DNA from: Octopus bimaculoides
Taxonomy: Eukaryota
Length of the DNA: 64,000 nt
Direction: 5' to 3'
Assembly: GCF_001194135.2 (NCBI RefSeq)
Contig: NC_068987.1
Coordinates: forward strand, 32,089,050-32,153,049
Positions 1-34,506 of the stretch are shown here, one piece after another. Position 1 is the first letter of the stretch, and the number at the start of each line of letters is the position of its first letter. The notes below the pieces were generated by a model. The model saw only the letters and a program-made list of their open reading frames with translations. It was not told the origin of the DNA and made no database searches. Both the position numbers and the translations under genes were made by a program.

Positions 1-215
1 GAGCGTGGCCGTTTTCGTGCGGGTGACACGTAAAAGCACCCACTACACTCTCTGAGTGGTTGGCATTAGGAAGGGCATCCAGCTGTAGAAACTCTGCCAA
101 ATCAGACTGGAGCCTGGTGTTGCCATCCGGTTTCACCAGTCCTCAGTCAAATCGTCCAACCCATGCTAGCATGGAAAGCGGACGTTAAACGATGATGATG
201 ATGATGATGATGATG
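1..215 (+). mobile_element. RTE-type LINE/SINE 3' tail ending in (GAT)n
   Basis: ccatgctagcatggaaagcggacgttaaacgatgatgat tail; about 97% identical inverted copy at 34346-34506. Confidence 0.8.
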
Positions 216-439
216 AATAAAGAGAAAATCTCAGATTAGCCTATCACATATATGGTATAAAATGGCCACCTGTGATTTGTCAGAAAGGTTCTTGACTTAG
301 AGATTTTGAGAGGATTAAATGTAGGCTTAAACAGCTCTTTTTTAATCCCTGACAAAAGAAAAACTAAGCACCACAGTAGGAAACATTATAAATATGGAAT
401 AATATTTTATTCTAGAACATATGTTTTTCTTTCATATGT

Positions 440-1600
440 TGACTTTAAATACAAGACCCGCTTCATAGAGAATGGCTTATAATACTATTTTATTCATAAA
501 TTCTATACCAACATGTCACAACAGTTATTAGAATTGAATTACAATCAAATAAAGATTAAAAGCAACATAAATATGAACAGTACATAGAAGAAAAAGAATC
601 TGTTACCATTTCAGTTTCATAGCATTCTAAGATTTTAAGGCCTACTTAAATATCTGAGCAATTGTTGGCCTTTCCAAATATCCAAGGATTCCACTCGTTT
701 CATAAAAGGCAATAGTTGTAATTGGCATGTTAAACCTACAGATCACAGCCATTTCATCTTTGATCTCAACACCCTTTCTTTACTAGTCTTTGTTTTATGA
801 GCATAAAACTGGTCCTGTACAAGTAGAGATGGCTTTTTTTTATGTTACCAAGATACCTTCATGAGGTTTTATTCAATCATAACCTTAAAATTCATCTATC
901 CACCCAGGAAGGAATTTTGTCTCCTTTCACAAAATTTTCTTCTTAAAAATCTCCACAAGCTGCGGTTTCAAACTGTTTAAGAACCACTCTTCTATTTGAT
1001 ACTGCATCAAATGTCAATGATTCCACCTATGTTTCTGATGTGACACAATTCAGTCAGTTTGTTTTCTTACTCTGAATACAAAACTGTAAATTTCAATTAT
1101 TTTGTTCTTATAATCTTCAGGTATTTATTTTGCTGTTCTTATTTTCATATTCATTACCAATCTGTAGCTCTTCATAAAGCTACAGCACCACAAAAATAAT
1201 CTAGACCTTCCACTGCTTTAAATTTAGATTCATTAATAAGAAGTTTTGATGATACTACCTGACTAAACCATCCATTTTTTTCATCTCCCTAATCTTCTCC
1301 CTAAACCATCCAATCTTTTAATCTCTTCAACCAATTCTGGGCCATTTAGCTGAAGATTTATATTTACCTCTTCGCACAAGATTTAACAGACTCTCTCACT
1401 TCTTCATATCATTTTCTCAATTGGAAGTGGTCCAAAATACTTACTTTCATCTATGTATGTTGCTATGCTGCTTGGCATATTTAATTACTTCAGTGCCATG
1501 TTGTTTGGCATATTTAATTACTTCAGTGCCATGTTGTTTGACATATTTAATTACTTGCAACTTTAGAAATACATAAGCGGGCAGTTTGAAGTTGTAGACC
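440..1600 (-). mobile_element. Highly decayed pogo/Tigger-like (POGK-type) DDE transposase fossil
   Basis: Frameshifted motifs on the minus strand: brinker-like FLKLQVIKYVKQHG (about 1540-1580), KWPELVEEIKDW (about 1310-1347), LTFD (about 1010-1020), AVIxxGLTCQLQ (about 715-750). Confidence 0.6.
1472..1556. repeat. 33-bp tandem repeat, about 2.6 copies
   Basis: Unit ttggcatatttaattacttcagtgccatgttgt; gives the KQHGTEVIKYA repeats in ORF 1447-1653. Confidence 0.95.
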
Positions 1601-4600: not shown

Positions 4601-5008
4601 GAGTTTCTGTTTACGGTAATGCTAGAATGTTATATGACAACAATCGCTAAATTTGCATCAAACATCACAAATTTACATATCACTAATTGCTAGATATGAA
4701 TAGACACTCTTATACAACTCTTCATAGATGTAACACTGAAAACGTTGTGTTGTGGTGTATAGTTTGAAGCAGGTATTTCTAATACAGCTCATTCTTCAAG
4801 TTACACCCTACACAAGAAATTGAAGTCATCACTGCAAGATAACAAAGCATTTGTGAATTAAAACCCAGAGACTCCAAACTAAGCACTTTACTGAACCTAC
4901 ATTCTGACCTGTTACTTAAAGCAATGATTTTGGTTGCTTGATATTCCACCCATTTAATGATGCTGGTCACTTGACTTTCTGATAAATTAATTAATAATAC
5001 TGTTCAAC

Positions 5009-5377
5009 GTGGAGGCGCAATTTCCCAGTGGTTAGGGCAGCGAACTCGCGGTCGTAGGATCGCGGTTTCGATTCCCAGACTGGGCATTGTGAGTGCTTAT
5101 TGAGCGAAAACACCTGAAGTTCCACATGGCTCCGGCAGGGGATGGTGGCGGACCCTGCTGTACTCTTTCACCACAACTTTCTCTCACTCTTACTTCCTGT
5201 TTCTGTTGTGCCTGTAATTCAAAGGGTCAGCCTTGTCACGCTGAATATCCCCGAGAACTACGTTAAGGGTACACGTGCCTGTGGAGTGCCCAACCACTTG
5301 CACGTTAATTTCACGAGCAGGCTGTTCCATTGATCGGATCAACTGGAACCCTCGTCGTCGTAACCGACGGAGTGCCA
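5009..5377 (+). mobile_element. Full-length tRNA-derived SINE (family A) with 10-bp TSD
   Basis: A-box/B-box-like head (cagtggttagg ... ggtttcgattccc); TSD ACTGTTCAAC at 4999-5008 and 5378-5387; homologs at 37823 and 58650. Confidence 0.85.
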
Positions 5378-5659
5378 ACTGTTCAACAAAATGAAACTCT
5401 TTTTAATCATCAGAGTTGCTGACTGACATTTCTGGGTTAATTTTTGATGCTGATTACGAATCTGAAGTCCAATTAATGATACCTGCTGTTTTAACTTATA
5501 GGATATGTAAAGCATGTCTATATAAAGTATATTGAATACAAGATATGATAATTTCATGGCTTTTTATTGTACAAAATTTAAATTGTTGTGTACAAATAAG
5601 TTAGAATACACTCAAATGCATAACAACTTAAAATCTTTGGGATTTGAACTTTCTATTTT

Positions 5660-5760
5660 TTTTGCCTCAGGTTCATCCCTGTATAGCATTCAACAGTAGC
5701 ATTCCAAAATCCTTCATATCGTTGTTTCATCGATGCAATATCTTGATGAAAGCCTTTGAT
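5660..5760 (-). mobile_element. Fragment of a DNA transposase C-terminus (FHQDIxxMxxRYxGxWN family, probably CMC/Chapaev-like)
   Basis: Minus strand reads GFHQDIASMKQRYEGFWNA, then after a frameshift C*MLYRDEPEA; superfamily assignment is from memory. Confidence 0.55.
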
Positions 5761-7069
5761 TTGGCTGTGTCTGGTGCAACAATGCTCTGCAGTTGCTGGC
5801 CAAAGTCAGCCATAAAATGTTTTGTTCTGATACCTGACACCAACTTTCAGTTTTGTCTATTTTGTGTTAGACGTTAGAAGGGTTAGTTATGAACTGTAGG
5901 GTCAAGGAAGGTCAAACCGACACTGCTCAATGATTGAAAAATATTGAACAAATAATTTTCAATATTGCCATGCTGCAATAGATCAACAAAAACATTAATT
6001 AACTGATTTGCCAAGATTAATGATCAGTGAACCAACATTTTGAATCAGATTTTGAATCTTGACTTGGGCTCCTGTTCCAAGTTAAAGCAATGTTACTAGT
6101 GTCTAGATATTCTGACTAAATAAACAAATTGATACTAGTCTCTGGACGTTTTGACCAATAACTAAAAACAACCAATGCTTTCTGACCAGTCATTGGCACC
6201 GGTCTTGGAACATCTAAACAAGTACTTAAATCAACTGATACTGCTCTCCTGGAGCTCCAGTTACAAATATACTTCCATTAAAAAATTTTGTTGTTGATTT
6301 GTTCATTCTGAAAGAAGGGACTGAGTTCATGATTTTTACATCCCTCACAAAATTGGTAACTACAAGAAATAGACTGGAGAGTATTTAATATCTCTTTGTA
6401 AGAAATTTCTCTAAAAGGATGAAAGTATTTTGTATCTAAAAGGTTGAAAGTATCTTGGTGAAAGTATCTTTTTGCATCAACATCATCACTTAATGCCTAT
6501 TTTCCGTGATGGCATGGGTTTGACAGGAGCTGGCAAATCAGAAGATTATGCCAAGCTTGACCATCTGCTTTGGCATGTCTCTAGGGTTATATGCCCTTCC
6601 TAATGTAAGAAATATTGAATTTTAATCATCACCTGTTTCTGTTATGTAGCTGGAATAGAAAACTTTTAAGGAAAACGATTAGCAGCTATTTTCTTCCTAT
6701 CTGACTGTTTCCTTTTGGTGTGAACATTTTTTTGTTTTACATTCTATGTCACATTTGGTCACCTAATACTAACTGCTTGACAGAAACTATATTCTCTCAA
6801 AACCCTGTATAAGAAGTATGTTCCCATTCACACAGCAAGGTGTTGACTACAGACTGTAAAGAACACTTTCTAACACAGATATACAAACTCACATAAAGCA
6901 ATCCAAAGAGCTTGCTGGAAGCCTGCATATAATCTCACATACATGCAGTTGAAGAAATATGCTCTTACTTGCACATATCGTTGGTTTGATATTGAGAACA
7001 AGCTCCTACACAGGCATATACATACTGACAAAAATACACAGAGGGGAAAAAAATTATGCCCCCTCACTT

Positions 7070-7104
<35 letters not shown>

Positions 7105-7454
7105 TTATACAATAAGTATTTTTTATATTATTACTTAGCATTTTTTCTGTTTTTGCTAATGAATATTTTGTTTAGATATGAGTTCTTCTACATCTTTGTG
7201 ACTATAAGTGTTTTTACAACTGTTGTTTATATATTATAATCCCGTGTTGCTTATTCAATTTTCTTCAGTTTATTAATCCTTTGTGTTAAAATAAATTTCG
7301 ACAGATATAGCACATCAGGAATTCTATCCATCCACTCCATGTTCAAATTATTTCGTTAAAAATCTTGAAATGATTCAACCGCATTGTTTTCTCTTTACCT
7401 TTTCTCTAACTTAAAAGGAAAGGAATTAATATAAAATTAAATATATTTGATGGT

Positions 7455-7660
7455 TCAAATTTCGGCACCAGGTGGCCAATTTTAGCGAGGCGGAGGTTAA
7501 TTGATTATGATAAAGTACGCAAGGACAACTTTATTTTATCGACCCTGGAGAGATGAAAAGCAAAGTTTATTTCGGCGAGATTTGAACTCAGTACATAGCA
7601 AGCCGGAACAAATACTGCAATGCATTTTTCACAATGCTGTAAGGATTTTTTTCTGATCGC
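7455..7660 (-). mobile_element. tRNA-derived SINE (family C), decayed
   Basis: Matches ttatcgaccc..ggatgaaa.gcaaagt..ctc.gcga.atttgaactcag seen at 10380, 14395 and in the 40.8-41.5 kb array. Confidence 0.7.
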
Positions 7661-8289
7661 CGCTTTCTGAATAATGTAATGTAGTTTTTAGTCACTTGCT
7701 TACAATGATAATTAAAAGAAATAAAGGATATGAAATAATTTTCAGTTGCTTTTCTTTTTTACACGAATAATCGATGAATCAATAAATATATTGCAGAACA
7801 TAAAGAGATAGTATTTTATTATTGTTATAAACTGGGGAAAAACTTTGATAGTTATTTCTCCTTGTACAAAAATTACCACCACACCTCACAAATTGTACTT
7901 ATATTTTATTGTTTCTAAGTGGCATTGCTCTCTACAGGCAGTTATGTACTTAAAAAGGTTTAGTAATTTCATTTATTAATTTTAAAAAAAAATTAACTTT
8001 TATTTCGTTTGTCAAGGAGGATTGTTAAAGCCAAAACAATGGGTGGTGATGGTTATGGATTAAGATTAAATCATTACTGAGATTGTGAAGAGTATCCTAT
8101 AACTTGAGATATGCAGCGTATCCCATTACTAAGATTGCAGAGCAGACAAGGAGTGAAAGAATGATGTATTTTGGGTCAAGGCGGTGAACAAACCCTATCG
8201 CACACTTAACTTGACGAAAATATCAGCACACAAGCAAATGTGTGTACTAGACATGCTGGAAATACCAGCATCATCTCCCTCATATTATA

Positions 8290-8495
8290 CTCTAACAGAA
8301 TTGTTTACGCGTTTGACAAAATACTTAGCGGCATATCTTCCGGTTTACGTTCTGAGTTCAGATACTACCGGAGTAAACTTTGCCTTTCATCCTTTCGGAG
8401 TCAATGAAATCAAGTACCAGTCAAGAAGTTGTGTCGGTGTAATTGACTTACCCCTTCTTCTCATATTACTGGCTTTGTGCTAAAATTAGAAAGAA
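8290..8495 (+). mobile_element. SINE family C copy
   Basis: acgttctgagttcag...ctttgcctttcatcctttcggagtcaatgaaatcaagtaccagt...ggctttgtgctaaaattagaa. Confidence 0.75.
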
Positions 8496-8687
8496 TTATA
8501 CTCTACTCTCTATAAAAAATAGAAGTTGAATAATATCACTCTTGATATTCAAAAAGACTATAATTTCAACTGGAAAACTTTGATCATAATGATCTGCCTA
8601 ATTTTTGCTGATCTAAGCCTCACCAACAGCCAACATTGCAGTTTTATAGAATAATCTTATGAAAAACATTATGGTATTCATTCTTTG

Positions 8688-9285
8688 GATCTTTCTGATT
8701 TGACGGGCAACACTTGTTTTCTTAACGAAACACTTTCAAACTTGGGATACTGGTAGAATGTGTCATATAAAACAACTTTTTCTCTTAGCCTTCTTAACAA
8801 AAATTGTACATCGCAAGTTATTTCATGTTAAAATTGTCGTATTTCTGTAATTTCAACCAATCACTGACGTCTATTCAGCTGAATACAGTTACTGCTGTTT
8901 TTGTAAACAATAATTTTTTGCCGGTGAGAAAAATGTTATTCCCTGTTAATTATTTCCTTTGGTTTTTTTGGTTTGTTTTCTTTTGAAGCAGACAAAATTA
9001 CAGAAAAATGGTAATTTATACGCATATATTGTTTATATAATAATTTACGCTGTGTGTATCTGTGTTTGTAACAATTTTTCGCTAATTTTCTATGTACTAA
9101 CACACGTGTTTACGAACAGTCTAGCTCATAGGAAATGTCAGAACTAACAGGGATTAATACCATATACACCGCCACAGCAGTAACTGTATTCAACTGAATA
9201 GATTGGTTGAAATTATCAAAATAAGACAATTTTTAACATGAAATAACTTCGAATACAAAAATTTTTATCTGTTCTATAACACAAA
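8688..9285. mobile_element. Non-autonomous TIR element (Merlin-like MITE family), right end in a gap
   Basis: Internal inverted arms (ttcaaccaatcactgacgtctattcagctgaatacagttactgctg / cagcagtaactgtattcaactgaatag); termini shared with 18886-19277 and 40131-40692. Confidence 0.7.
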
Positions 9286-9295
9286 NNNNNNNNNN

Positions 9296-9330
<35 letters not shown>

Positions 9331-9474
9331 GACGAGCTGTCCACAAGGCTCTGGCTTTATGGATATGAAACCTTTGGTAATATTTAAGGCTTTATATCTA
9401 TAATAAAAAAAAACGAAACTTTTGGTAACTCTATGTCTCAAATTAAGATTTTTGTTGTAATACACACACACACC

Positions 9475-9682
9475 AAGGGGTGCTGCAAAGTTCCTGGCTT
9501 TGGGTAAAATACAGGAGGATCAGTTAACTATGATTTTATTGAACATATTTCCCTCTTAGATTCACATACTTATCGCAGCGGTCCTTCAATTTTTCTAAGC
9601 CCTGCAAAACAACTCGGAATTTGAGCCTCCGACCAGGCCTTTCGTGACATCCTTAAAACCAGGAACTTTTCAGCACCCCTCA
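9475..9682. mobile_element. Mariner-type MITE, about 205 bp
   Basis: TIRs aggggtgctgcaaagttcctggcttt / aaaaccaggaacttttcagcacccct. Confidence 0.8.
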
Positions 9683-10379
9683 TATATCAGATTACTTTTG
9701 AGGTCTCTCATGAGTGCCACTGGTAACATGAAATTCAGTACAGCCTGTTGCATAATCGGGTCGTCAGCAACTAAATTGGCATTCCCACTAGGTTAGTCTG
9801 ATGAGGAGATTTGTTAGACACCCAGTAGGACGAAAACCTGTTAAAACGACAAATGAATCCAGGCTGGTGTTCGACGTGCTGTAAGACCACTGGAAATGAG
9901 GTACCTTTGAGCTTTTGTTAAAGCATGTCTCCAGAAGAAGGTTACTGATATAAAAACGGATATACAGTGAATGGCATTGGACATTTTGAGGATCTTTAGT
10001 CTACGCTTGATATCATGGTACCCCCAGATCCTTGAGCCTGCGACCCGTATTGGCACTAGACATCGTGTCTCAGTTTGTCTCTGGATCATGTCAATATGAT
10101 GGAAAGAGTCTATGAAGTGTTTTGCAAGCTTTATTGGATCTAAAATATTGCATAGGCATTGCTGACATTTTGCATGGGCAAGTTACACTAACTTGGAAAA
10201 TGGTCTTGATCTGGCTGCCATCCATCGTCCAACAAAAATTTGGTCTTGAACAGAGTTGATACAACTGATAAACAGCACGCTTGCTAGATATTTTAGCGAT
10301 TTTAGGAAGATAATAAATAATGAGGGCTTTGAAACTATTTGAACTCAGAATGTAAATGAATATTGATTTCAAATTACAG

Positions 10380-10590
10380 CATATAGGGCCAGCAATTTCG
10401 GGGGAGAAGGTAAGTCGATTGCATTGACCCCAGTGTTTAACTGGTACTAATGTTATCGACCTCAAAAGGATGAAAGACAAAGCTAACCTCAGCGAAATTT
10501 GAATTCAGAACGCGAAAACGAATAGTCGCTAAGCATGTTGCTCGGAGTGCTAACGGTTCTGTCAGCTAGCTGCCCTTTGAACGTAAATGG
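10380..10590 (-). mobile_element. SINE family C copy
   Basis: ggccagcaattt...cccagtgtttaactggtact...ttatcgacctcaaaaggatgaaag...gaattcagaacg. Confidence 0.75.
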
Positions 10591-12600
10591 ATATTACGAG
10601 GTATTTTGTATAGTTTACTATTGATCATATTGTCCATTGTTCCAATAATTAAATAATTGACTGCAACGGTGGTGAAGTTTTAATGTTTATAATGAAGCGG
10701 GGAGAAATGACTGAGGAACAATAGTTGACTGATTATTAAAATGGCCATTTATTAAGATGATTATGATATTAGTCGTGAGTGTTTCATCGATGCCGCTATG
10801 GTAGCTGGTTTAGTTAATGAATGAAAATATGTTCCTTAGCTGCGTGAAGAATAATTGAACAATACATGCAAATATGTATCAGAAAAATTTATTGTCGCTC
10901 GCAAAGACAATCTGCTTTGGCATTTTAACAACAGCTGTAATTACAGACTAGGAGGGAGCTACTGCTGTGAGATTACAGAGGCTATTGGTACAGCAAAATG
11001 TGGTTTACTCAATATATCTGAAAACAATTGTGCTATCTTCATGGTGACAGAAGTTCTTGGTCATCTATCTTAGCCGTCTGTTTTGTTGTCTTAGTGGGTC
11101 ATCTTGTCTTAACATTCTACCTGGCAAGAGGTGAGATGTGTGACTGAGTCGGCCACTCTCAACGCTACACTCTGCAAAGGGTGTACTCGCCATAAGCGGC
11201 TCTTTTGTAAGGGACAAGGAGATTGTGGAAGATTGAACCATGCAACGGCTTCATGCAGATAGGCCGATCAAATGAAATTATTGCAGTTCAGTCGTGGTGT
11301 CTGACCAGTTACCTATCGGTTCGGTTTCAAATTACCGCAACAGGCAGTATGGTCACGGCTAGAATAGCATTGATCATAGGCTTGCTTGATTAGGGCCAAC
11401 TTGCGATTAACCAACCATGATAATAACAATTTGTAAATTAAGCACGAGCCCAGATACTTGGGAGAGAGGATTCCAGTATTTGACTTTATTTTATTGACCC
11501 TGAAGAAATGTGTAGCAAGACGGCTTGACAAAATATAAAAAACCCTTTTGTCTTACTGTTTTTGCTAACAGTTCTTTCTACTGATCGCATATTTGTGTGT
11601 CCCACAAGCATTCTGGTGGGTGAGTTCTGTAGCAGAATGGATTGACAAAATAAAAGAAAGCAAATTATTCTCTCTCCCTTTGATTTATAGTTGTTGTTTG
11701 GACGTAGCAGAAAACACTTACCTATAAAGACCAGGTTGTAACCGTTGATACGATTGCTTACTTTTAGGTGCAAATTGTCCCCCTCACAATTGCGCCATAT
11801 TACACGGTCAACACGCTAAAATGGATCGCGTGTTCTCTTGTCGGAAAAAACTTCCATCACTCCTGGAAGCCCACTATTCTTTACGAATGCAGTTCTCGTC
11901 TGTTCTACGTCTTTGGCACACGTAACTCGTCTCCGACAAAGACGTGTGTGTGTGCGTATATACACGTGTTTTACCCTTATTGCTTTTTTACACATTTTTC
12001 TATATTTTGCCTTTAGCTGTTTTTTTCTTGTGCATGTGCATATATAGACGTGTGTATGAACCTTTTTTGCGCGCGTGTGTATGTGTGCAAGCATGTGCGT
12101 GTATGTATATATTTTTTGGCGAATGTGTGGGTGAGCATGTGTTTCAAGTGAGAGTGGATGAGGATATACATATGGGCGCATGTACGTGGTAGTGCAGGTG
12201 CGCATGTGTATGTATGGACTGGTGCGCTTACGCGAATACTATGGACATTTTTACTCCCTCCCCTCACTAAGCAGTCATTCTAATAGCTCTTTTGTCTTAA
12301 TAACTGTCAATCACACAGTAATTTCCCTTTGTTTAACGATCATTTGCATAGCATTTTTTTCGATGGCCAGATAACTGAAGAAATGGTGGCGTGGGTTTCC
12401 GCCCCGACATCCGAAACACGGAGTTTTATCATGGTTACCGAATAATTGTCACATATTATTTACAGATAAATTCCTCTATTTANNNNNNNNNNNNNNNNNN
12501 NNNNNNNNNNNNNNNNNNNNNNNNNNNNNNNNNNNNNNNNNNNNNNNNNNNNNNNNNNNNNNNNNNNNNNNNNNNNNNNNNNNNNNNNNNNNNNNNNNNN

Positions 12601-13771
12601 TAATGGAAACACCTCACATCATAATTTTGAAATATCTATAAAACCGTCAAAAGCTTGTTTATTTTTGTTTTTTAATTTATCATTAGTGTTCCTTAATATG
12701 TTTAGCTAAAATTGCTGTTTCTTTTCAGATATCATCAGAAAAAAGGTAATTAAAATGACAGATCTATCGAACTTTCAAAGAGATCAAATTGTTGGTGCTC
12801 GTATGGCAGGCGCTAGCGTAACGAAAACAGCCGAAATCTTTTGTGTATCTAGAAGTACTGTTTTGTAAGTAATGACAACCTTCGAGAAAGAGGGAAAAAC
12901 CTCCTCGTCGAAACAAAACTCCGGAAGAAAACTAAAACTTTCATATAGGGACCGTCGGACACTTACGCGAATTGTTAGAAAGGATCACAGAAGTACAGCT
13001 CCCAAAATTACTGCAGAGCTTAATGACCACCCCGAGATCCCAGTTTCCACAAAAATTGTTCGCCGGGAGCTGCACAGAGTCGGATTTCACGAGAGGGCTG
13101 CAATCAGAAAACCACTACTTTCAACAACAAACGTTGCAATGTATTTAGAGTGGAGTAAAAACCTACAGATTTGGTCCCAGAACAGTAGAAGAATGTAATT
13201 TTCTCGGACGAGAAGCATTTGACCCAGACTGCCTTCTTCCAACTGTTAAACACGGAGGAGGATGATATGGGGGTGGGTGGCTATATCTTGGAAATCTGCC
13301 GGCCCAATGATTTCTCTTCATGGCAGAATTAATAGTCAAGACTATTTTAGCATTTTATCTGATCAAATTCATCCTATGGTTGCGGAATTGTTTCCGGATG
13401 GAAACGCAATCTTTCAGGATGATAGCGTACCAATTCACACAGCTAAAGTTGTTACCGAATGGCACAAGAAGCATTCTAGTGAAGCTGAACATCTTATCTG
13501 GCCACCACAGTCCCCAGATCTCAATATCATTGATCATTTATGGTTCATTTTAGAAAAACAAGGAGTCGATGTCCTCCACCATCACCACTACAAGAACTGG
13601 TGACTGGTTTAGCTGAAGAATGGACAAAAATTCATTTGGAAACAATTCAAACTTTGTACGTGTCCATACCTCGTAGAATTCAAATTGTAATTACTGCCAA
13701 AGGCGGTCCTACCCCATATTAAAATAAATTTGTTTGAAATTTTAAGGTGTTTCCATTATTTTGTCCAACTC

Positions 13772-13773
<2 letters not shown>
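12601..13773 (+). mobile_element. Near-complete defective Tc1-family transposon with DD36E-type spacing
   Basis: Left TIR remnant taatggaaacacct (rest in gap), right TIR aggtgtttccattattttgtccaactctg next to (TA)n; transposase 12755-13722 with HTH, FSDE, FQDD, WPPQSPDLNII; stop, frameshifts and a deletion. Confidence 0.92.

Positions 13774-13774
<1 letters not shown>

Positions 13775-13831
<57 letters not shown>
13775..13831. repeat. (TA)n microsatellite, one of many; most N gaps abut such repeats
   Basis: Pure TA run directly after the Tc1 TIR; similar runs at about 9295, 16325, 18003, 26958, 52675, 53413, 57467 and 59030. Confidence 0.95.
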
Positions 13832-13832
<1 letters not shown>

Positions 13833-14394
13833 CCCTGAAACTCGAGTCGCCTTTATATTTTTATATTTATATATTTGATCCTTTATATTGAACACTCAAT
13901 ATTTCATCTACATTCAATACTTTCTTTCATGGTGCCATCCATTTTTATTTTATTTTATTTTATACTATATATTGTATATTATATTATATATTGTATATTC
14001 CATATTCTATACCCCACATTGGTTCTGCAGGAATATAAATAAAACATAAAAAACAGACAGTGTTGGAACTCTTTTAAACAAAATAATATATATATATATA
14101 TATGACAATAAGCATTCGAGTAATTAAAATTACCTATTCTAAACTTAGATTAACGTGGTTAAGGCTTTCACAGACACGTGTACTCTTATTGTAATTCGCA
14201 GGCTAACCGATACGAGGTAAAATTCGATCTTTGAATTACAGTACATCTAATGGGTTTCCATAAATTTTCCATCTATCCAATTATACCACCAAGACACCGC
14301 CTAATGGAATCAAAACTAGAATTTCAAGACTGAGAAGCGAACTTAGTTACTGCTCGTCAGTGCCTACCCTAGAATTGAATGGATTATTTCTGCA

Positions 14395-14600
14395 AAAGGC
14401 ACAAGGCCTGAAATGAGGTGGGGACGGGGGCAAGTCGATTACATCAACTCCCAGTATTTGGCTGCTACTTAATTTATCGATTCTGAAAGGTTAAGTCGAC
14501 CTTATCGACATTTTAAACTCAGAACGTAAAGACGGGCGAAATGCCGGTAAGCATTTTGTCCGGCGTGATGAAGATTCTGTCAGCAAGCTACCTTTAAATT
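14395..14600 (-). mobile_element. SINE family C copy
   Basis: ggcacaaggcc...caagtcgattacatc...ttatcgattctgaaagg...actcagaacgtaaagacgg. Confidence 0.75.
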
Positions 14601-14790
14601 TGAAAGGATTACAGTGTAACACGAATTTTGTCCTTGTGTAGCAACTATTTACTTAACACTAGAAAGTATGAAAAATGGCTAGTATTTCCTTCAAACTTTG
14701 TTATATTTATTTAAACCTCAAAGTATCCTTATCAACACATGGCCATGATGCTTCCCCAACTCCTGCTTATGATCAGAAATGCACATGTTG

Positions 14791-15213
14791 TCAATCACTA
14801 ATTGACATGCCCAAGTGGTGAAGGTCAAGCAACTGACCAGCAAATCTGTGGTATTGAGCAGAATATTTGCTGTAATGATATTTCTGCTTCAACAACTCAG
14901 AGCTGAAATGTATTGGAAAATAGGTCAGTTTCAAAACATTGATGTCCAGGTGACAAAAGTAAAGATTGAAGGGAATAGTAGACATTTCCTTTGATTTCTT
15001 GATAGAAGCAAATAGGAAATAATACTTACAGACCAAAGACTATAAGGAAAAAAAAAAAAAAAAGAAATGACACAGAGTTATTAAACGAAAAAAATTGTTT
15101 GGATGGAATAAGGACAACATTAATCTTGGCGGCATTTAACTTACAGGAACATAATCAAAGGTGTTTCGTTCAGCGTTCAGGTCTTCAATGATGGCAGTAA
15201 AAATTGTTGTCAT
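14791..15213 (-). other. Candidate divergent spliced transcript/ORF (exon 15213-15145, intron 15144-15040, exon from 15039)
   Basis: gccATG at 15213; GTAAGT donor; 105-nt intron ending (T)n-CCTTATAG; spliced frame stays open to TGA at 14791 (105 aa); no recognisable homology. Confidence 0.3.
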
Positions 15214-15930
15214 GGCACTTGACCACGATTTTTGTTGCAGTAAGGTACAATATCGAGCCATAGGAGGAAATCAAAGTCAATTCTGACTGGATTTAATCCC
15301 AGAATATTAAGGGACGTAACTAAATATTACAAAAAATTTTACTTCAAATCCTCCCGCAACCTCATGTTTAGCCCTGGGTCAATTTGATTAAGCAAATCAT
15401 TATCAAAATTATTCTAGCCACGACCATCCCGTTTTTGTAGAATGTAGGAATACATTGTCTAATGTCCCTTCCCTGTTTAAGATGATCTGGTTCAAGTTGA
15501 GTGAGATTAACTGTTGTTTCTGACACTTCGAGCGACCACATAGGGGCTCTGACGCCAAGTCTAAAGATGATTACGACGATGATGATGAAGATTATGAAGA
15601 AGTTGAAATTTTAACTATTCTTTATGAAAAAAGTATCGAGGAGATGAGAGAGAAGGTGCAGTTGTTTGAGTAGACAAAGAATTAAAAATGATGACTATCC
15701 TATTTTTTTTCTTTAGATTAAGTATATTTAAAATCATATCTAATGTACCATTCACTAAGTGTAATTTCAGAGTCGATTTGGGTACTATGTATAACTGAAC
15801 AAATGTCTACATAAAGACTTTCCTCATAGCCTCATCCTGTCATTAATTTAGACATTGTATAACTAGGACTAATATTAATTTTAAGGGAAATTTCACTGCG
15901 CTGTTTAGCATTGCCAAGTACAAGCACAAT

Positions 15931-16050
15931 GATTGGATGGCGGGAGGGAAAGTGATGTTTTTTTAAAGGGGAGACAACTGATGGGTCGTTGAAGAACTGT
16001 GTGACGCCACCTAGTGGCCATCATGATAAGTTAGAGCTAACGCCATTTTG
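15931..16050 (+). promoter_or_regulatory. Putative U2AF2 promoter: inverted CCAAT, GC box, CTCF-like motif, YY1 motif
   Basis: GATTGG 15931-15936; GGCGGGAGGG 15939-15948; reverse complement of 16003-16020 = TGGCCACTAGGTGGCGTC (CTCF consensus); CGCCATTTTG 16041-16050 (YY1), 127 nt upstream of the ATG. Confidence 0.6.
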
Positions 16051-16176
16051 TAACTTTGTATCACTGAACTATTTATTGTTGCTTAAAGTTATATTAATTA
16101 GATAGTTTATTGTGAAAAAGGATATTTTTATTTCATTGAAAAACATATATCACATTAGTAACAATCTAACACAACA

Positions 16177-16234
16177 ATGACAGACGCTGAATACCTCGAA
16201 TTTGAACGACAGATTGCTGAAAACCGGGCAGCAG
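16177..16234 (+). CDS. U2AF2: U2AF2 coding exon 1 (MTDAEYLEFERQIAENRAA, phase 1)
   Basis: ATG at 16177; EFERQxxEN matches the U2AF65 N-terminus (human MSDFDEFERQLNEN); donor CAG|GTAATC at 16235. Confidence 0.9.
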
Positions 16235-16323
16235 GTAATCGTTGTTTGGCCATGTACATTTGTGTTTGTGTGTGCGTGCGTGTTCTTTATCTCTCTTCAA
16301 GTCTTTATGTGATGTGCGTTGTG

Positions 16324-16370
<47 letters not shown>

Positions 16371-18002
16371 ATATATATATTGTGTGTGTATATATATATT
16401 GTGTGTGTATATATATATGTGTATATATATATGTGTGTGTGTATATATANNNNNNNNNNGTGTGTATGCATGCATGCGTGTGATTGCTCTCCTATATAGT
16501 GTGTATGTGTCGATTTAGATCTTTCTCTATATATATATATAGAGAGAGAGAGACAGACGGGCATATGCACACAGAAATATAGAAAGATGACTAGAATGTC
16601 TTGGAAAATTCATGTCTTCAATGGTTTTTAAACTAATTCCAAGTCAGACCTAACTGAGCGGAAGAATTATCTTCCACTTATAATCATTCTGCCGCCTTTC
16701 ATTCAGACATATTGTCTATAGGACGGCATTATCCCAATCTGCATTTATCCAATAGATTTGAGGGCAAATTTAGGTATTATCTTTATCAAGTCTACCGACC
16801 ACGTAACAGCAGTTGCACTAGCTCATTTCTAAATAATATATATATATATTATTCAGAAATGAGGTAGCGCAATATATATATATATATATATATATGCACA
16901 TCACATACACACGTGCACGCGCGCAATGTGTCCAGAACTTTTATGTTTAAAATAAAGAAAATTTTTAATTCAAAGTGAAATTTCTAAAATGTTTCATGTA
17001 TTTTTGTTATCCGGCCTTAAAACAATAAAATCTAATAATATAGGCATCCCTTCGATATTCGTTTACACTGTACAGTGTCGGTGTGAAGAGACGACGTCAT
17101 AAGGTTTTCGAAACTCTCCCTCTCTCTCTGTATATGTATGTATATATATATNNNNNNNNNNNNNNNNNNNNNNNNNNNNNNNNNNNNNNNNNNNNNNNNN
17201 NNNNNNNNNNNNNNNNNNNNNNNNNNNNNNNNNNNNNNNNNNNNNNNNNNNNNNNNNNNNNNNNNNNNNNNNNNNNNNNNNNNNNNNNNNNNNNNNNNNN
17301 NNNNNNNNNNNNNNNNNNNNNNNNNNNNNNNNNNNNNNNNNNNNNNNNNNNNNNNNNNNNNNNNNNNNNNNNNNNNNNNNNNNNNNNNNNNNNNNNNNNN
17401 NNNNNNNNNNNNNNNNNNNNNNNNNNNNNNNNNNNNNNNNNNNNNNNNNNNNNNNNNNNNNNNNNNNNNNNNNNNNNNNNNNNNNNNNNNNNNNNNNNNN
17501 NNNNNNNNNNNNNNNNNNNNNNNNNNNNNNNNNNNNNNNNNNNNNNNNNNNNNNNNNNNNNNNNNNNNNNNNNNNNNNNNNNNNNNNNNNNNNNNNNNNN
17601 NNNNNNNNNNNNNNNNNNNNNNNNNNNNNNNNNNNNNNNNNNNNNNNNNNNNNNNNNNNNNNNNNNNNNNNNNNNNNNNNNNNNNNNNNNNNNNNNNNNN
17701 NNNNNNNNNNNNNNNNNNNNNNNNNNNNNNNNNNNNNNNNNNNNNNNNNNNNNNNNNNNNNNNNNNNNNNNNNNNNNNNNNNNNNNNNNNNNNNNNNNNN
17801 NNNNNNNNNNNNNNNNNNNNNNNNNNNNNNNNNNNNNNNNNNNNNNNNNNNNNNNNNNNNNNNNNNNNNNNNNNNNNNNNNNNNNNNNNNNNNNNNNNNN
17901 NNNNNNNNNNNNNNNNNNNNNNNNNNNNNNNNNNNNNNNNNNNNNNNNNNNNNNNNNNNNNNNNNNNNNNNNNNNNNNNNNNNNNNNNNNNNNNNNNNNN
18001 NN

Positions 18003-18041
<39 letters not shown>

Positions 18042-18309
18042 ATTCGAATGTGTGTGTGTATTATAGCATATGAATTTCAAATGTGAATATTCCCGTCGCT
18101 TTATTGATGTTTGTTTTCCATGATGGATCTTCAATCGAAGTTTAAATTTTTAACTTGGTTTCTATGGCTAGATGACCTTCATATTATCAACCACTTTACA
18201 GGGTGTACCGGGTGCAATTTATCGTGGCACCAACACTTGTGTGGATTGTCATGTCCTTGACGTAACTAAAGACTTCTCTTCACCCCTTTTGTCTCTGCTC
18301 TCTTGTCAG

Positions 18310-18429
18310 CGTCCTGAAAGGAGTTTATAGGGCCAACAACACAAAAGTGAGGTTGTCTTGTGCCATGTAAGATTAGTCTTCAGCCCACTGTTCATTCCCT
18401 AAGGGGTGGTAATAGATGAAACCGGGCAG
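18310..18429 (+). other. Candidate stop-containing (poison) cassette exon in U2AF2 intron 1
   Basis: 31/35 pyrimidine tract then CAG at 18307-18309; donor CAG|GTGAGT; 120 nt; in-frame TGA at 18315-18317; all three frames closed. Confidence 0.5.
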
Positions 18430-18885
18430 GTGAGTAGGAAAGATCAGAAATGGTGCAAAAAGATCTTTTTGAATTATCTAGTGCGCCAAAAATCCTGCAA
18501 TTTCTTCAGATGCATGTTTAAACATTGCAGATTACTATTCGGGAGGGTTGGGGGCTTTGTTGGAAGTGAGTTCGTCTCCGTTTTTCTTTCTTTTTTTTTT
18601 TTTTTTTTNNNNNNNNNNNNNNNNNNNNNNNNNNNNNNNNNNNNNNNNNNNNNNNNNNNNNNNNNNNNNNNNNNNNNNNNNNNNNNNNNNNNNNNNNNNN
18701 NNNNNNNNNNNNNNNNNNNNNNNNNNNNNNNNNNNNNNNNNNNNNNNNNNNNNNNNNNNNNNNNNNNNNNNNNNNNNNNNNNNNNNNNNNNNNNNNNNNN
18801 NNNNNNNNNNNNNNNNNNNNNNNNNNNNNNNNNNNNNNNNNNNNNNNNNNNNNNNNNNNNNNNNNNNNNNNNNNNNNNNNNNNNN

Positions 18886-19277
18886 TAGAACAGAAAAAAA
18901 TTTTTGTATTCGAATTTATTTCATGTAAAAAATTGTCTTATTTCGATAATTTCTACTAATCACTGACGTCTATTCAGCGTAATTTATTATATAAACAATA
19001 TATGCGTATAAATTACGATTAAACCGGATGAAATATGTCACAGGGAATAACATTCTTATGACCGTCCAGCAGTAACTCTATTCAGCTGAATAGACGTCAG
19101 TGATTGGTTGAAATTACAGAAATACGACAACTTTAATATGGAATAACTTGCGATGTACGTTTTTTTGTTAAGAAGACTAAGAGTAAAAGATGTTTTATAT
19201 GACACATTCTACCAGTGTCCCAACTTTCATAGTGTTTCGTTAAGAAAATACTGGTGCCCCCGTTTTGAAATAGATCC
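18886..19277. mobile_element. Merlin-like MITE family copy, opposite orientation to 8688, left end in a gap
   Basis: Same inverted arms and terminus ...ccccgttttgaaatagatcc. Confidence 0.75.
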
Positions 19278-20400: not shown

Positions 20401-23400
20401 TGCATGATATCTAGATAAATGGAGACACACACAAAGGTTAACCTAAGGTTGTAGATAGAAGACTATAGTGGGACTGAACCCAAAACCATAGTTGTGAAGA
20501 GAGAAAGTTTTCCACTTTTTTTAATCATTTGAAGAAGCTAGGAAAAGTTTCAGTGAGTTGGATGGATTCCTCCTGCTTTTAGCAGCAAATTGTCAACATA
20601 GACTTGACTACTGTAAATTACTCCATTCGTGTCATCTCCAAGCACCGTTTTGAGATCGGATCAGTATTGGATACTTTACAGTAATATTAAGTCCTGTGGG
20701 CAATGTAAGCCCAAATGAAAATCCTGTACCACAACCACAAGAGTGACTACACCCCAAGAATATTTTCGTGGCACAATGGATGTTAGTAATTAATGAAAGT
20801 GTGGTTGGAGAGAACAGTGTTAATGGCTGAGGGATGGATAACATGAAGTGGTTCTGGCTACTAAGAAAAGTTGTGTCAAGAAAGAACTGCAATGAGAGAA
20901 GTGATGAGTGGTGGTGCTATATTTGAAGAGGAGCAAAATTGTGTGAAGGGGCCAGTTGTGCATGCAGGCTCCAATGAAGCTCTAAGGCGTTACTTAGGCA
21001 CTCAACTATGAGTCACTGCATCTTATAGCGGAAACAGCTGCAAGCTAATGAAGTTCATAAAATAATCATTTATTCCTTGGTCATCTCTTTTTCGTATATA
21101 GATTCACACACAAGTTCATATATTCAGCTTTACCAGAACTCTGTTTCCCTGAGGTAGGCAATTCTTCTCAAGAACCACATATTGCCAGTAATCCCAACCC
21201 ATTATCATCATCCCTTTCAGGTGCTCCTTTTGAAAATAATACTGAATATCAAGCAGAACTTTCTGTTCAACCTGATATGAGTAAAAACTTATTTTTACTT
21301 TCATGGGCAATCATATAATCTCTGTTAAATNNNNNNNNNNNNNNNNNNNNNNNNNNNNNNNNNNNNNNNNNNNNNNNNNNNNNNNNNNNGAAAAAAAATC
21401 AACCTGTTTAAATGAAAGCTTTAGTTTTCAAAATTCTGAAAACATATTTTTTACTCATGTTAAATCTCATAAAAAAAAACAAAAACAACCAACTCATTTT
21501 CCATAGATCACCGTTTCTGTGCTACTTCTCTCATTACCTGCTGACACCTAAACCTCATTTCTTAATTCTGTTTCATATCTACCATTGATCACTTCCCACC
21601 TTTGTTCACCATTTCATTCAACTCTATGTACCTCTGACCACTTCCATTTCTATCACTATACATCTCACCCTGTCCAACACACATTCTTGCAACCATTATC
21701 CATGAATCCCCACCAATATTCTTTATCTCTCATTTTCCCCCTAATTACTATATTATTCTGTTGTTTTTACTATTGCTATATTGCTTGCCATCAACTCTCC
21801 CCTGACATCCATCCCTCTTATCTCCCCCACAACTTTACCTTTAACCACCCCATTCACTACCTTCATTCTTACTTACATCCCTAAATCAATCTTCCTCTAC
21901 ATTCTTCTGCCTCACACTCTATTCACCTAGTGCTATTTTGTCCTGACGCCTTGTCACCACCATCTTAATCTCTTTTTCCAGCTCAACCCTCAATTACTTC
22001 CACTTATCCTTATATATTGTAAAGTAGCCATGTACTTCCTCTAGAGCAAGAAACGTGTTCCTATTATACTTTAAACTTCTCAGCACCTAGCATAAAGCTG
22101 CTTCCCTCTCTCTTATACTCTCATTCAGTTAAGGGGATGTCTTTAGTCTTGCAAGGTACATGTTGGCTTCACTAGTGCCATAAAAGAAGCATCTCATACA
22201 CTAAGTAGTTGGCATTGGGAAGGGCATTTAGCCATAGAAATCGTTCCAAAGCAGTCATTGGAGCATGGCATAGTTTTCTGACTTGTTGGATCTTGTCAAG
22301 CTGTTCAAGCAATATTACAACTACAAACAGCAATGTATTTTCTATAACCTCTACAGAGACAGTAGCAAAGTCATATAAAAAAGAAATATATTTATTATGT
22401 TAATTGTATTTATTGTTCATAAGTATCAGTTGCTGCTGTTACTTCAGTGTCTCGTATCAAATCATCGCACATACTTCCTAATGACTCAGCTATTTTTAAC
22501 ACTATGGCATAGTTGAATTGGCCTAATTTGTCACTTGAATTCCCAAATTTTGTTTAAGGAGTGGAGTATCATCAATTATATTATTATTGTTAATGGAGAT
22601 CAAGACTAGAAATCTTGGTGGTGGGGAAGGTGTGTCGCAAATTTGATTTGTTCAGTCAATATTGCATGTTTGTAAAGAATTGTAAATATGTGATAAAATA
22701 CTAAATTAACTCTGAAGGATGAAAAGTAAAGTCTTCTTTGGCTGGATTTGGGATCCAAATGTAACGAAATAAGTGTAAAGTACTCTTACATAAATCTACA
22801 GAAGAAAAAAATAGAGTTGATACATTTATGTTTTGACTGAAAGCAGTTATGAAGCTGTTTGATCTGATGATGTGTCCAATTCACATTTGTGGAGGATTAC
22901 TGTCAGTAATTGACATGTTTGGTTATGAAATCAGTATTGGCTTCATTCATACTAATATCAACCTTACTAAAACTCTAAACATCTATATAAGTGTTTAGTA
23001 ATGCCATAGTTATAATAGTGATTCTATGAACAGCTTGATTTTTATTTTATCAACTTAGTGTTAGGCATCTAGTAATTAATGTATGTGGACATTACCTAAT
23101 ATTGATTGTCAAGCCATGATTTTGTGAAAAGAGGATGAAAGTATACCACAATCCCCAAACGGGGATCATTGCCTAACCCACAGGAAAAAGAACCCACATC
23201 ACAGAAGCTGTCCCTCTAAGATAATGACTGCAACCAGAAATCCTACCTGCATCATTGTTGTAATGACCTGCTTCATGTTCTAACTACACATGATGCTACA
23301 ACTTCATTTCTTAACTTTTCAAACACTCATCCTAGACATGCACAGCTTCCATTATGGAGACCTCAAATAACTTGCAAGACATGGCATAACTTAGTTACTT

Positions 23401-26232: not shown

Positions 26233-26609
26233 TTCTTTTACTTATTTCAGTCATTTGACTGCGGCCATGCTGAAGCACCGCCTTTAACTGAACAAATCGA
26301 CCCCAGGACTTCTTCTTTGTAAGCCTAGTACTTATTCTATTGGTCTCTTTTGCCAATCGCTAAGTTATGGGGACGTAAACACCCCAGCATTGGTTGTCCA
26401 AGTGATGTTGGTGGAGACAAACATATAAACACACATACATATATATATATGCGACGGGCTCCTTTCAGTTTCTGTCTACCAAATCTACTCACAAGGCTTT
26501 GGTCGGCTGAGGCTATAGTAGAAGACAATTGCCCAAGGTGCCAGGCAGTGGGACTGAACCTGGAACCATGAGGTTGGTAAGCAAGCTACTTACCACACAG
26601 CCACTCCTA
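26233..26609 (-). mobile_element. tRNA-derived SINE (family B), antisense, ending about 30 nt before the exon 2 acceptor
   Basis: Head (reverse complement) aggagtggctgtgtggtaagtagcttgc...ggttcagtcccactg; homologs at 38331 and 53047. Confidence 0.85.
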
Positions 26610-26638
26610 TATACATATATCTTTTCTTTTTTCCACAG

Positions 26639-26759
26639 ATGAACGACGTCGTAGATCCCCTGGGGCTTCTGGCCAGCCTGGTCCTTTTCCTCAAGGTGCA
26701 CCTCAAGCTGGCAGGGGCCGCAGGTCTAGGTCAAGGTCACCACGCAATAGAGCACGTAG
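26639..26759 (+). CDS. U2AF2: U2AF2 exon 2, RS domain; 3' end lost in the N gap at 26760-26957
   Basis: Acceptor cttttcttttttccacag; phase-1 join gives DERRRRSPGASGQPGPFPQGAPQAGRGRRSRSRSPRNRAR. Confidence 0.88.
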
Positions 26760-26957
26760 NNNNNNNNNNNNNNNNNNNNNNNNNNNNNNNNNNNNNNNNN
26801 NNNNNNNNNNNNNNNNNNNNNNNNNNNNNNNNNNNNNNNNNNNNNNNNNNNNNNNNNNNNNNNNNNNNNNNNNNNNNNNNNNNNNNNNNNNNNNNNNNNN
26901 NNNNNNNNNNNNNNNNNNNNNNNNNNNNNNNNNNNNNNNNNNNNNNNNNNNNNNNNN
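26760..26957. other. Assembly gap truncating U2AF2 exon 2; a second gap at 27498-28049 could hide another small exon
   Basis: The N run begins in the middle of an RS-repeat codon. Confidence 0.95.
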
Positions 26958-34345: not shown

Positions 34346-34506
34346 ATCATCATCATCGTTTAACGTCCGCTTTCCATGCTAGCATGGATTGGACGATTTG
34401 ACTGAGGACTGGTGAAACCGGATGGCAACACCAGCCTCCAATCTGATTTGGCAGAGTTTCTACAGCTGGATGCCCTTCCTAACGCCAACCACTCAGAGAG
34501 TGTAGT
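34346..34506 (-). mobile_element. RTE-type 3' tail, young copy
   Basis: Reverse complement is about 97% identical to positions 43-205. Confidence 0.85.

What the first reader, a model, noticed from the sequence alone, without database searches (positions are those of the whole stretch)
18273..18435. Candidate poison cassette exon in intron 1 of the splicing factor U2AF2
Seen: a textbook 3' splice site (TTCAC branch-like motif at 18279-18283, 31/35 pyrimidines, CAG), a 120-nt exon and a consensus donor CAG|GTGAGT, better than several constitutive donors in this gene. Spliced to exon 1 (phase 1) it reads GCG TCC TGA, giving a 21-aa product, and all three frames contain stops. Its 3' end AAACCGGGCAG is identical to 11 nt near the end of exon 1, in the same frame (NRA). 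Established: many splicing-factor genes (SR proteins, hnRNPs) autoregulate through stop-containing exons coupled to NMD. Inference: a very strong U2AF65-binding tract here could make inclusion sense U2AF levels, forming an undescribed feedback loop in a mollusc. The stop is AUG-proximal, so the result could be translational shut-off rather than NMD.
Basis: partly seen in the sequence, partly recalled or inferred. Interest (0 to 1): 0.75.

Follow-up and report, generated by a model that had tools for sequence, protein, structure and literature searches.

The report
Rarely used pseudoexon in octopus U2AF2
The sequence really looks like a stop-containing exon inside intron 1 of the splicing-factor gene U2AF2. 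Public RNA data show only its downstream splice site used, in one library at under 1% of transcripts, and it evolves like neutral intron, so it is most likely an ordinary cryptic pseudoexon, not a feedback switch.

Summary
The sequence observation holds. At 18310-18429 a 120-nt segment lies between a good acceptor and a perfect donor, CAG|GTGAGT. That donor is the best-scoring one on either strand of the window. Joined to exon 1, the segment gives a 21-aa product ending in TGA.

The gene is U2AF2 (90% identical to the Argonauta hians protein).

RNA evidence:
- One contig in one run (X16, depth 4.5 against 763 for the main mRNA) joins 18429 exactly to exon 2 at 26639. It runs unspliced through the proposed acceptor.
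- No exon 1->18310 junction was found in any run.
- In three raw RNA-seq runs, all 162 reads crossing the exon-1 donor go to exon 2, and none lies on the candidate.

Conservation and copy number:
- A sister species (95.5% identical) keeps both splice sites. The exon diverges at the same rate as its flanks.
- In that species the branch-like motif and the 11-mer shared with exon 1 are both broken.
- Argonauta intron 1 has no counterpart.
- The exon is single-copy.

Verdict: a lineage-restricted pseudoexon whose strong donor is used sporadically. The cassette form and the autoregulation idea are unsupported but not strictly excluded, because no NMD-inhibited data exist. Interest is low.

The parts
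16045..16234 (+). U2AF2 exon 1. Reads begin at about 16045-16050, the ATG is at 16177, and the exon ends in phase 1 with the donor CAG|GTAATC.
   Evidence: read starts; 162 reads cross 16234 into exon 2; 94.5% identical to Argonauta exon 1.
16221..16231 (+). The exon 1 copy of the 11-mer AAACCGGGCAG.
   Evidence: It is conserved in Argonauta exon 1.
18148..18284 (+). Upstream flank with weak (74-85%) similarity to dispersed repeat fragments.
   Evidence: matches to window 22-92, 22203-22240, 34456-34493 and 52148-52209; several other contigs match 18203-18241 and 18244-18284 at about 80-85%.
18284..18309 (+). Polypyrimidine tract and CAG acceptor of the candidate exon. No use of this acceptor was observed.
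   Evidence: 10.7 bits; conserved in the sister species; every RNA contig that crosses it is unspliced.
18310..18429 (+). The 120-nt candidate pseudoexon. It is single-copy, has stops in all three frames, and contains internal donor-like sites (exon ends at 18346 and 18366).
18316..18318 (+). TGA that would end translation after 21 aa if the exon were joined to exon 1.
   Evidence: Unchanged in the sister species.
18419..18429 (+). The candidate's copy of the 11-mer AAACCGGGCAG. It reads AGACAGGGCAG in the sister species.
18430..18435 (+). Consensus donor GTGAGT. It is used, spliced to 26639, in run X16.
   Evidence: the contig covers 18232-18429 and continues ATGAACGACGTCGTAGATCCCCT, which is the start of exon 2; 13.5 bits, the best in the window.
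26639..26759 (+). U2AF2 exon 2 (start of the RS domain), cut short by an assembly gap at 26760. Its acceptor serves both exon 1 and the cryptic donor.

Best explanation
The segment is a lineage-restricted pseudoexon (cryptic exon) in the 10.4-kb first intron of U2AF2. By chance, a perfect-consensus 5' splice site lies 120 nt downstream of a good 3' splice site.

The spliceosome almost always ignores the pair and joins exon 1 directly to exon 2. Occasionally the strong donor at 18429 is paired with the exon 2 acceptor; this was seen in one library at roughly 0.6% of the depth of the U2AF2 mRNA. The resulting RNAs still carry intron sequence upstream of 18310 and cannot encode U2AF2.

These products are splicing noise, presumably removed by RNA surveillance, and not a regulatory device.

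Shown: the sequence features, use of the donor, absence of the cassette form in the data available, a neutral rate of change, and single-copy status.

Inferred: that the products have no function and are degraded.
For: -: the X16 contig is 18232..18429 followed by the first 23 nt of exon 2. This is an exact GT-AG junction, but the contig is unspliced across 18310.
- that contig has depth 4.5, against 763 for the exon 1-exon 2 mRNA contig in the same run.
- 78+45+39 = 162 raw reads cross the exon-1 donor. The consensus of what follows is exon 2, with agreement 0.98-1.0.
- none of about 36 million raw reads from the same three runs lies on 18200-18560.
- 19 runs (14 typed as RNA, 5 of unknown type) hold exon 2 completely. 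Only X15, X16, X18 and X14, plus X4 (which looks like a DNA run), hold any candidate words.
- X14, X15, X17 and X18 also hold 30-41% of ordinary downstream intron. Their unspliced contigs on the candidate are therefore generic intronic or genomic background.
- in the sister species there are 5 changes in the 120-nt exon, 6 in the 109-nt upstream flank, and 3 plus one indel in the 107-nt downstream flank. The TTCAC motif and the 11-mer are both broken.
- no homolog in Argonauta hians intron 1 (Smith-Waterman score 23; shuffles 22 +/- 2).
- several acceptor-donor pairs as good as the median real exon occur in the introns.
- no Rfam family and no unusual RNA structure (z = 0.09).
Against: - The donor is the strongest in the whole window, and only about 6% of such donors would have an acceptor this good 50-250 nt upstream (my estimate from the counts). 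The pair is therefore unusual for a single gene.
- Transcripts targeted by NMD are expected to be rare in steady-state RNA, so low counts do not exclude a regulated poison exon.
- Logan contigs drop rare variants, so a low-level exon 1->18310 junction could have been filtered out.
- Only about 6% of each raw run was read, and the tissues and conditions are unknown.
- A sister species at 95.5% identity is too close for a powerful test of constraint.
Confidence: 0.6

Rival explanations
1. The segment is a genuine, lineage-specific poison cassette exon. Both splice sites are used, the exon 1-candidate-exon 2 isoform carries an early stop, and it is kept at very low steady-state levels by NMD or is not translated. 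Inclusion may be regulated, possibly by U2AF itself.
For: - Both sites score as well as or better than the real U2AF2 sites.
- The donor is demonstrably functional.
- The stop and both splice sites are retained in the sister species.
- Splicing-factor genes often use such exons. PMC6547761 supports an event of this kind in U2AF1 and proposes, at low confidence, a poison exon in human U2AF2.
Against: - No exon 1->18310 junction appears in any run.
- The only spliced RNA reads through the acceptor.
- The exon shows no conservation above its flanks and has no counterpart in Argonauta. The well-studied SR and hnRNP poison exons, by contrast, are highly conserved (my own knowledge).
- A strong polypyrimidine tract should be a poor sensor of U2AF excess.
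- By eye, the exon contains silencer-like motifs (UAGGG, GGGG). Their role is inference.
Confidence: 0.15
2. The segment is an alternative first exon transcribed from a cryptic start site inside intron 1. Transcription would start near 18130-18150, possibly driven by the degenerate repeat there. The resulting leader would end at the strong donor 18429 and splice to exon 2. It would be non-coding or would allow only N-terminally truncated products.
For: - The X16 RNA contains intron sequence upstream of the acceptor, back to at least 18232, with a further short contig at about 18153-18187.
- X16 has no contigs at 18044-18139 or at 16560-16832.
- X16 is not among the runs listed as holding downstream intron.
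- In X16, therefore, the covered block ends at the donor and does not look like uniform pre-mRNA.
Against: - Contig coverage at depth 4-5 is patchy, and absence is not informative.
- No data on 5' ends are available.
- The signal is seen in one run only.
- The frame leading into exon 2 is closed by TGA at 18417-18419, and an ATG at 18416 opens only a 5-codon reading frame. No useful protein is apparent.
Confidence: 0.15
3. The 18429->26639 junction is not a splicing product. It would be a reverse-transcriptase template switch or an assembly chimera between intronic RNA or DNA and the very abundant mature mRNA.
For: - Both partners share CAG before the join and TGA after it: CAG|gTGA in the intron and CAG|ATGA in the mRNA. 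This microhomology could support template switching.
- The junction is seen in one contig of one run, at depth 4.5.
Against: - The join falls exactly at a perfect GT donor and at the authentic AG acceptor.
- Logan assembly needs 31-nt overlaps, and the shared sequence is far shorter than that.
- Depth 4.5 implies several reads.
Confidence: 0.07

Closest known systems
Intronic pseudoexons and cryptic exons, i.e. consensus-like splice-site pairs in long introns that are normally ignored (reviewed in PMC8819188)
   Same: - Good 3' and 5' splice sites at exon-like spacing inside a long intron.
- Stops in all three frames.
- Essentially absent from mature mRNA.
- No conservation beyond the neutral rate.
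- Sporadic use of one site.
   Different: The donor is unusually strong: a perfect match to the consensus and the best in the 64-kb window. The host gene is itself the factor that reads polypyrimidine tracts.
Poison exons coupled to nonsense-mediated decay in splicing-factor genes (SR proteins, hnRNPs, RBM39; U2AF1 exons 3a/3b; a low-confidence predicted poison exon in human U2AF2, PMC6547761)
   Same: It lies in a core splicing-factor gene, inclusion would introduce an early stop, and it is flanked by canonical splice sites.
   Different: - The upstream junction has never been observed.
- Inclusion is below about 1%.
- There is no elevated conservation.
- No evidence exists on NMD sensitivity or on response to the factor's level.
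The C. elegans uaf-1 (U2AF65) alternative exon described in Zorio et al. 1997, cited in PMC2762039. The details (many UUUUCAG/R repeats, nuclear retention of the mRNA) are from my own knowledge.
   Same: It is an alternative, non-productive exon in the U2AF large-subunit gene that was proposed to involve U2AF binding sites.
   Different: The octopus segment has no internal run of 3' splice-site-like repeats, only one CTTCAG. It shares no homology with the worm exon and is not shown to be included.
Recursive splice sites and recursive-splicing exons in long introns
   Same: It lies in a long (10.4 kb) first intron, and the motif CAG|GTGAGT juxtaposes an AG with a strong donor.
   Different: - There is no polypyrimidine tract before that AG; the preceding sequence ggtaatagatgaaaccgggcag is purine-rich.
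- Joining exon 1 to 18310 gives CAG|CGTCCT, which does not regenerate a donor.

Membership tests
Poison cassette exon (alternative splicing coupled to NMD) | The downstream junction (exon donor to next constitutive exon) is present in RNA. | tested here: met
   the X16 contig joins 18429 to 26639 exactly. It is one run only, at about 0.6% of the mRNA contig depth.
Poison cassette exon (alternative splicing coupled to NMD) | The upstream junction (previous exon to exon acceptor) is present in RNA. | tested here: not met
   No 16234->18310 junction was found. All 162 raw reads crossing 16234 go to exon 2, and no raw read lies on the exon. Every contig crossing 18310 is unspliced. Sensitivity is limited for an unstable isoform.
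Poison cassette exon (alternative splicing coupled to NMD) | Inclusion introduces a premature in-frame stop. | tested here: met
   ...NRAA-A-S-TGA, 21 aa. Stops occur in all three frames, also in the sister species' sequence.
Poison cassette exon (alternative splicing coupled to NMD) | The isoform accumulates when NMD or translation is blocked. | not testable with these tools
   No run with UPF1 depletion or cycloheximide was identifiable, and run metadata are coded.
Poison cassette exon (alternative splicing coupled to NMD) | Inclusion responds to the level or binding of the encoded factor (autoregulation). | not testable with these tools
   No perturbation or CLIP data exist for this organism.
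Poison cassette exon (alternative splicing coupled to NMD) | Conservation of the exon and flanks above the neutral intron rate. This is typical of the family but not obligatory. | tested here: not met
   5 changes per 120 nt in the exon, against 6 per 109 and 3 plus an indel per 107 in the flanks; no homolog in Argonauta hians intron 1.
Pseudoexon / cryptic exon | Consensus-like acceptor and donor at exon-like spacing inside an intron. | tested here: met
Pseudoexon / cryptic exon | Absent or nearly absent from mature mRNA. | tested here: met
   most runs that hold exon 2 hold none of the candidate's words.
Recursive splice site / recursive-splicing exon | A 5' splice site is regenerated after the upstream exon is joined, or a polypyrimidine tract precedes AG|GTRAGT. 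| tested here: not met
   exon 1 joined to 18310 gives CAG|CGTCCT. The sequence before CAG|GTGAGT is purine-rich.
Exon derived from a transposable element (exonization) | The exon or its splice sites lie within a dispersed repeat. | tested here: inconclusive
   The exon is single-copy: one contig in each DNA run and no other copy in the window. Only the flank at 18148-18284 shows weak (74-85%) repeat similarity. No repeat library was available.
U2AF2 (U2AF large subunit) as the host gene | An N-terminal RS region followed by RRM domains, with orthology to U2AF 50/65 kDa. | tested here: met
   the best hits are U2AF 50/65 kDa proteins, with 90% identity to Argonauta hians. RRM_1, E = 7e-28.

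The most novel reading that the evidence does not exclude
An octopus-lineage-specific, newly arisen poison exon in U2AF2. Inclusion, or use of its exceptionally strong donor, would divert a fraction of transcripts into an unproductive form and so buffer U2AF large-subunit levels. This would be an evolutionarily young autoregulatory loop in a core 3' splice-site factor of a mollusc.
Probability: 0.08. Interest if true: 0.5.

Novelty: not a real feature. Interest (0 to 1): 0.15.

Why it matters
If the exon were a regulated poison exon, it would show the factor that reads polypyrimidine tracts controlling its own dose through one, in a cephalopod. It would also be an example of such a loop arising recently rather than being anciently conserved.

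As the evidence stands, the finding is mainly a caution. Textbook splice-site pairs occur by chance in long introns. Here even the best donor in 64 kb is used in well under 1% of transcripts. Splice-site strength alone should not be read as evidence for a regulatory exon.

Tried and rejected
- **Whole upstream intron in one read-laying run.** Joints between exon 1 and the candidate therefore had to be inferred from loose ends.
- **High-copy repeat.** Rejected. There is one contig per DNA run at normal depth and no second copy in the window.
- **Duplication of the end of exon 1.** Rejected. The similarity does not extend beyond the 11-mer (p about 0.05 by shuffling), and the 11-mer is not kept in the sister species.
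- **Intronic snoRNA, miRNA or other structured RNA as the source of the local RNA contigs.** Rejected. There is no Rfam match at the site; the only matches are microsatellite-driven miRNA hits below threshold elsewhere. The fold z-score is 0.09.
- **Recursive splicing.** Rejected on sequence grounds.
- **Unspliced contigs in X14, X15, X17 and X18 as a sign of local enrichment.** Rejected. The same runs hold 30-41% of ordinary downstream intron.
- **N-terminally truncated U2AF2 predictions from another cephalopod (P0020; loci L002-L004) as possible poison-exon isoforms.** L002, the one I compared, is a 5'-truncated normal transcript contig, co-linear with the full-length L005 at 88% identity. 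L003 and L004 carry the same predicted protein and were not aligned.
- **Zorio et al. 1997 (PMC231820).** The paper is not held. It is cited only through the reference list of PMC2762039.
- **U2AF2 loci of other Octopus species.** None were returned by the protein search. Argonauta and one sister species, seen through DNA contigs, were the only comparators.

Full report
**Observation.**
- Exon 1 of the gene has its ATG at 16177-16179 and ends at 16234 (…AAACCGGGCAGCAG|GTAATC) in phase 1.
- At 18310 a pyrimidine-rich tract ends in CAG (…tgtctctgctctcttgtcag|CGTCCTGA).
- 120 nt later comes AAACCGGGCAG|GTGAGT, so the candidate exon ends at 18429.
- Exon 2 begins at 26639 (…ttccacag|ATGAACGACG).
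- Joining exon 1 to the candidate gives …NRAA-A-S-stop, 21 residues. All three frames of the 120 nt contain stops.
- The pyrimidine count is 29/35 or 30/35 (by eye), depending on where the 35 nt are placed, not 31/35.

**Host gene.** The exons in the window, concatenated, hit U2AF large-subunit proteins. The best hit is Argonauta hians 'splicing factor U2AF 50 kDa subunit-like' at 90% identity over the full query. Pfam finds RRM_1 at E = 7e-28. The window ends before the 3' end of the gene. The source is evidently an octopod (inference from the best hit).

- The candidate donor scores 13.5 bits, the highest on either strand of the window. The nine real donors score 3.7-11.1.
- The acceptor scores 10.7 bits. 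Real acceptors score 3.9-14.6, and 16 equally good acceptors lie on the sense strand within the gene.
- This is the only acceptor-donor pair at or above these thresholds.
- From those counts, a donor this good would have such an acceptor 50-250 nt upstream about 6% of the time.
- At the median strength of the real exons there are nine pairs in the gene. Only two of them fall on a real exon (both on exon 9; just one has its true acceptor).
- The pair is therefore unusual for one gene, but pseudoexons as good as real exons are common here.

**The 11-mer.** The match to exon 1 does not extend beyond the 11 nt, and 14 of 300 shuffles give an equal local alignment score.

**RNA evidence.**
- Contigs from several runs that hold exon 2 join exon 1 directly to exon 2.
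- In run X16, one 221-nt contig of depth 4.5 covers 18232-18429 and continues ACGACGTCGTAGATCCCCT after the shared ATGA. That is the start of exon 2, so the donor at 18429 is spliced to the authentic acceptor at 26639.
- The same contig runs unspliced through the proposed acceptor at 18310.
- The main mRNA contig in X16 has depth 763, so this species is roughly 0.6% of it.
- Contigs from X15 (18129-18406), X14 (18341-18595), X17 (18376-18599) and X18 (18200-18356) are co-linear with the genome across one or the other splice site.
- Those same runs hold 30-41% of ordinary downstream intron. Their coverage is generic intronic or genomic background.
- X16 is not listed among the holders of downstream intron. 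It has no contigs at 16560-16832 or at 18044-18139. Its signal is therefore specific to the block that ends at the donor.
- In three raw RNA-seq runs, about 6% of each was read (36 million reads in all). In them, 162 reads cross the exon-1 donor and all continue into exon 2, with agreement 0.98-1.0.
- No read from those runs lies anywhere in 18200-18560.
- No run shows the 16234->18310 junction.
- Of the runs that hold exon 2 completely, only a handful hold any word of the candidate.

**Conservation and copy number.**
- A DNA contig from a closely related species (organism B) covers 18201-18536 at 95.5% identity.
- The acceptor, the core pyrimidine tract, the TGA and the GTGAGT donor are unchanged there.
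- The changes are spread evenly: 5 in the 120-nt exon, 6 in 109 nt upstream, and 3 plus an indel in 107 nt downstream.
- Three of the changes destroy the TTCAC branch-like motif. Two change the 11-mer to AGACAGGGCAG.
- The exon 1 copy of the 11-mer is conserved as far as Argonauta.
- The Argonauta hians locus (L001) aligns at exon 1 and exon 2 but nowhere in intron 1. A sensitive local alignment of the candidate against that intron scores 23, against 22 +/- 2 for shuffles.
- The exon is single-copy in DNA runs and in the window. Only the flank at 18148-18284 resembles dispersed repeats, and weakly.
- No Rfam family matches the site, and its predicted RNA fold is no more stable than that of shuffled sequence.

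**Interpretation.** The best-supported reading is a pseudoexon. A chance pairing of a very strong donor with a good acceptor is almost always skipped. The donor is occasionally used with the exon 2 acceptor and gives unproductive RNA.

It cannot be excluded for four reasons:
- NMD substrates are rare at steady state.
- Contigs drop rare variants.
- Only part of each raw run was read.
- No NMD-inhibited data exist.

A second live alternative is a cryptic start site inside the intron, with 18429 as the donor of an alternative leader exon. That would explain why the X16 RNA contains intron sequence upstream of 18310 but apparently none further upstream. An artefactual junction is unlikely, because the join falls exactly on GT and AG.

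The autoregulation idea is also mechanistically weak. A strong polypyrimidine tract would be occupied even at low U2AF levels, so it makes a poor sensor of excess. The fact that textbook sites are ignored points to repression or to missing enhancers, as in other pseudoexons. By eye the exon contains UAGGG and GGGG, which resemble silencer motifs; this last point is inference from my own knowledge.

**Comparison with what is known.**
- Stop-introducing events in U2AF genes are not unprecedented. PMC6547761 supports one in human U2AF1 (exons 3a/3b) and lists a low-confidence poison exon in human U2AF2.
- C. elegans uaf-1 has a described alternative exon (Zorio et al. 1997, cited in PMC2762039). 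Its details are from my own knowledge, because the paper itself is not held.
- The octopus segment shares neither homology nor the repeated 3' splice-site motifs of the worm exon.
- It fails the recursive-splice-site test on sequence.

**Verdict.** Interest is low. The decisive tests are junction counting over all raw reads, RT-PCR with and without a translation or NMD block, mapping of 5' ends, and alignment of intron 1 across more distant octopuses.

Noticed in passing
window 12710-13600 (+): Remnants of a Tc1/mariner-type transposase lie about 2.5 kb upstream of the U2AF2 start. They are split over frames: HTH_Tnp_Tc3_2 (E = 4.7e-13), DDE_3 (E = 3e-10), and a weak HTH_7 match. This is a decayed DNA transposon.
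   Followed up: partly
window 26450-26612 (+): A very abundant dispersed repeat, SINE-like, ends about 25 nt before the exon 2 acceptor. RNA contig word depths reach 10^5-10^6 there. An 85%-identical copy lies elsewhere in the Argonauta locus (L001:14028-14126), so the family is shared across octopods.
   Followed up: partly
window 18929-18983 and 19080-19134: A 55-nt inverted repeat, 85% complementary with 96 nt between the arms, lies in intron 1 just downstream of the candidate. It looks like a small hairpin or MITE-like element.
   Followed up: partly
window 17152-18002, 18609-18885, 26760-26957: Assembly gaps flank the candidate on both sides, about 300 nt upstream and 180 nt downstream. 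Another gap cuts exon 2 inside the RS-domain coding region. Both the local context and the full protein are therefore incomplete in this assembly.
   Followed up: no
window 16045-16050 and 16125: Raw RNA reads pile up with starts at 16045-16050, the likely U2AF2 transcription start, giving a 5' UTR of about 130 nt. A T>A variant at 16125 appears in a minority of reads in two of three runs.
   Followed up: no
window 16121-16176 (run X16): An 81-nt contig of depth 312 joins the 5' UTR to the reverse complement of its own sequence (loose end TGTTGTGTTAGATTGTTACTAATGT). This is probably a library or assembly foldback artefact.
   Followed up: no
window 18346 and 18366: Two further donor-like sites lie inside the candidate exon (AAA|GTGAGG and CAT|GTAAGA). 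Shorter pseudoexons, for example 18310-18366, are therefore equally possible on paper.
   Followed up: no
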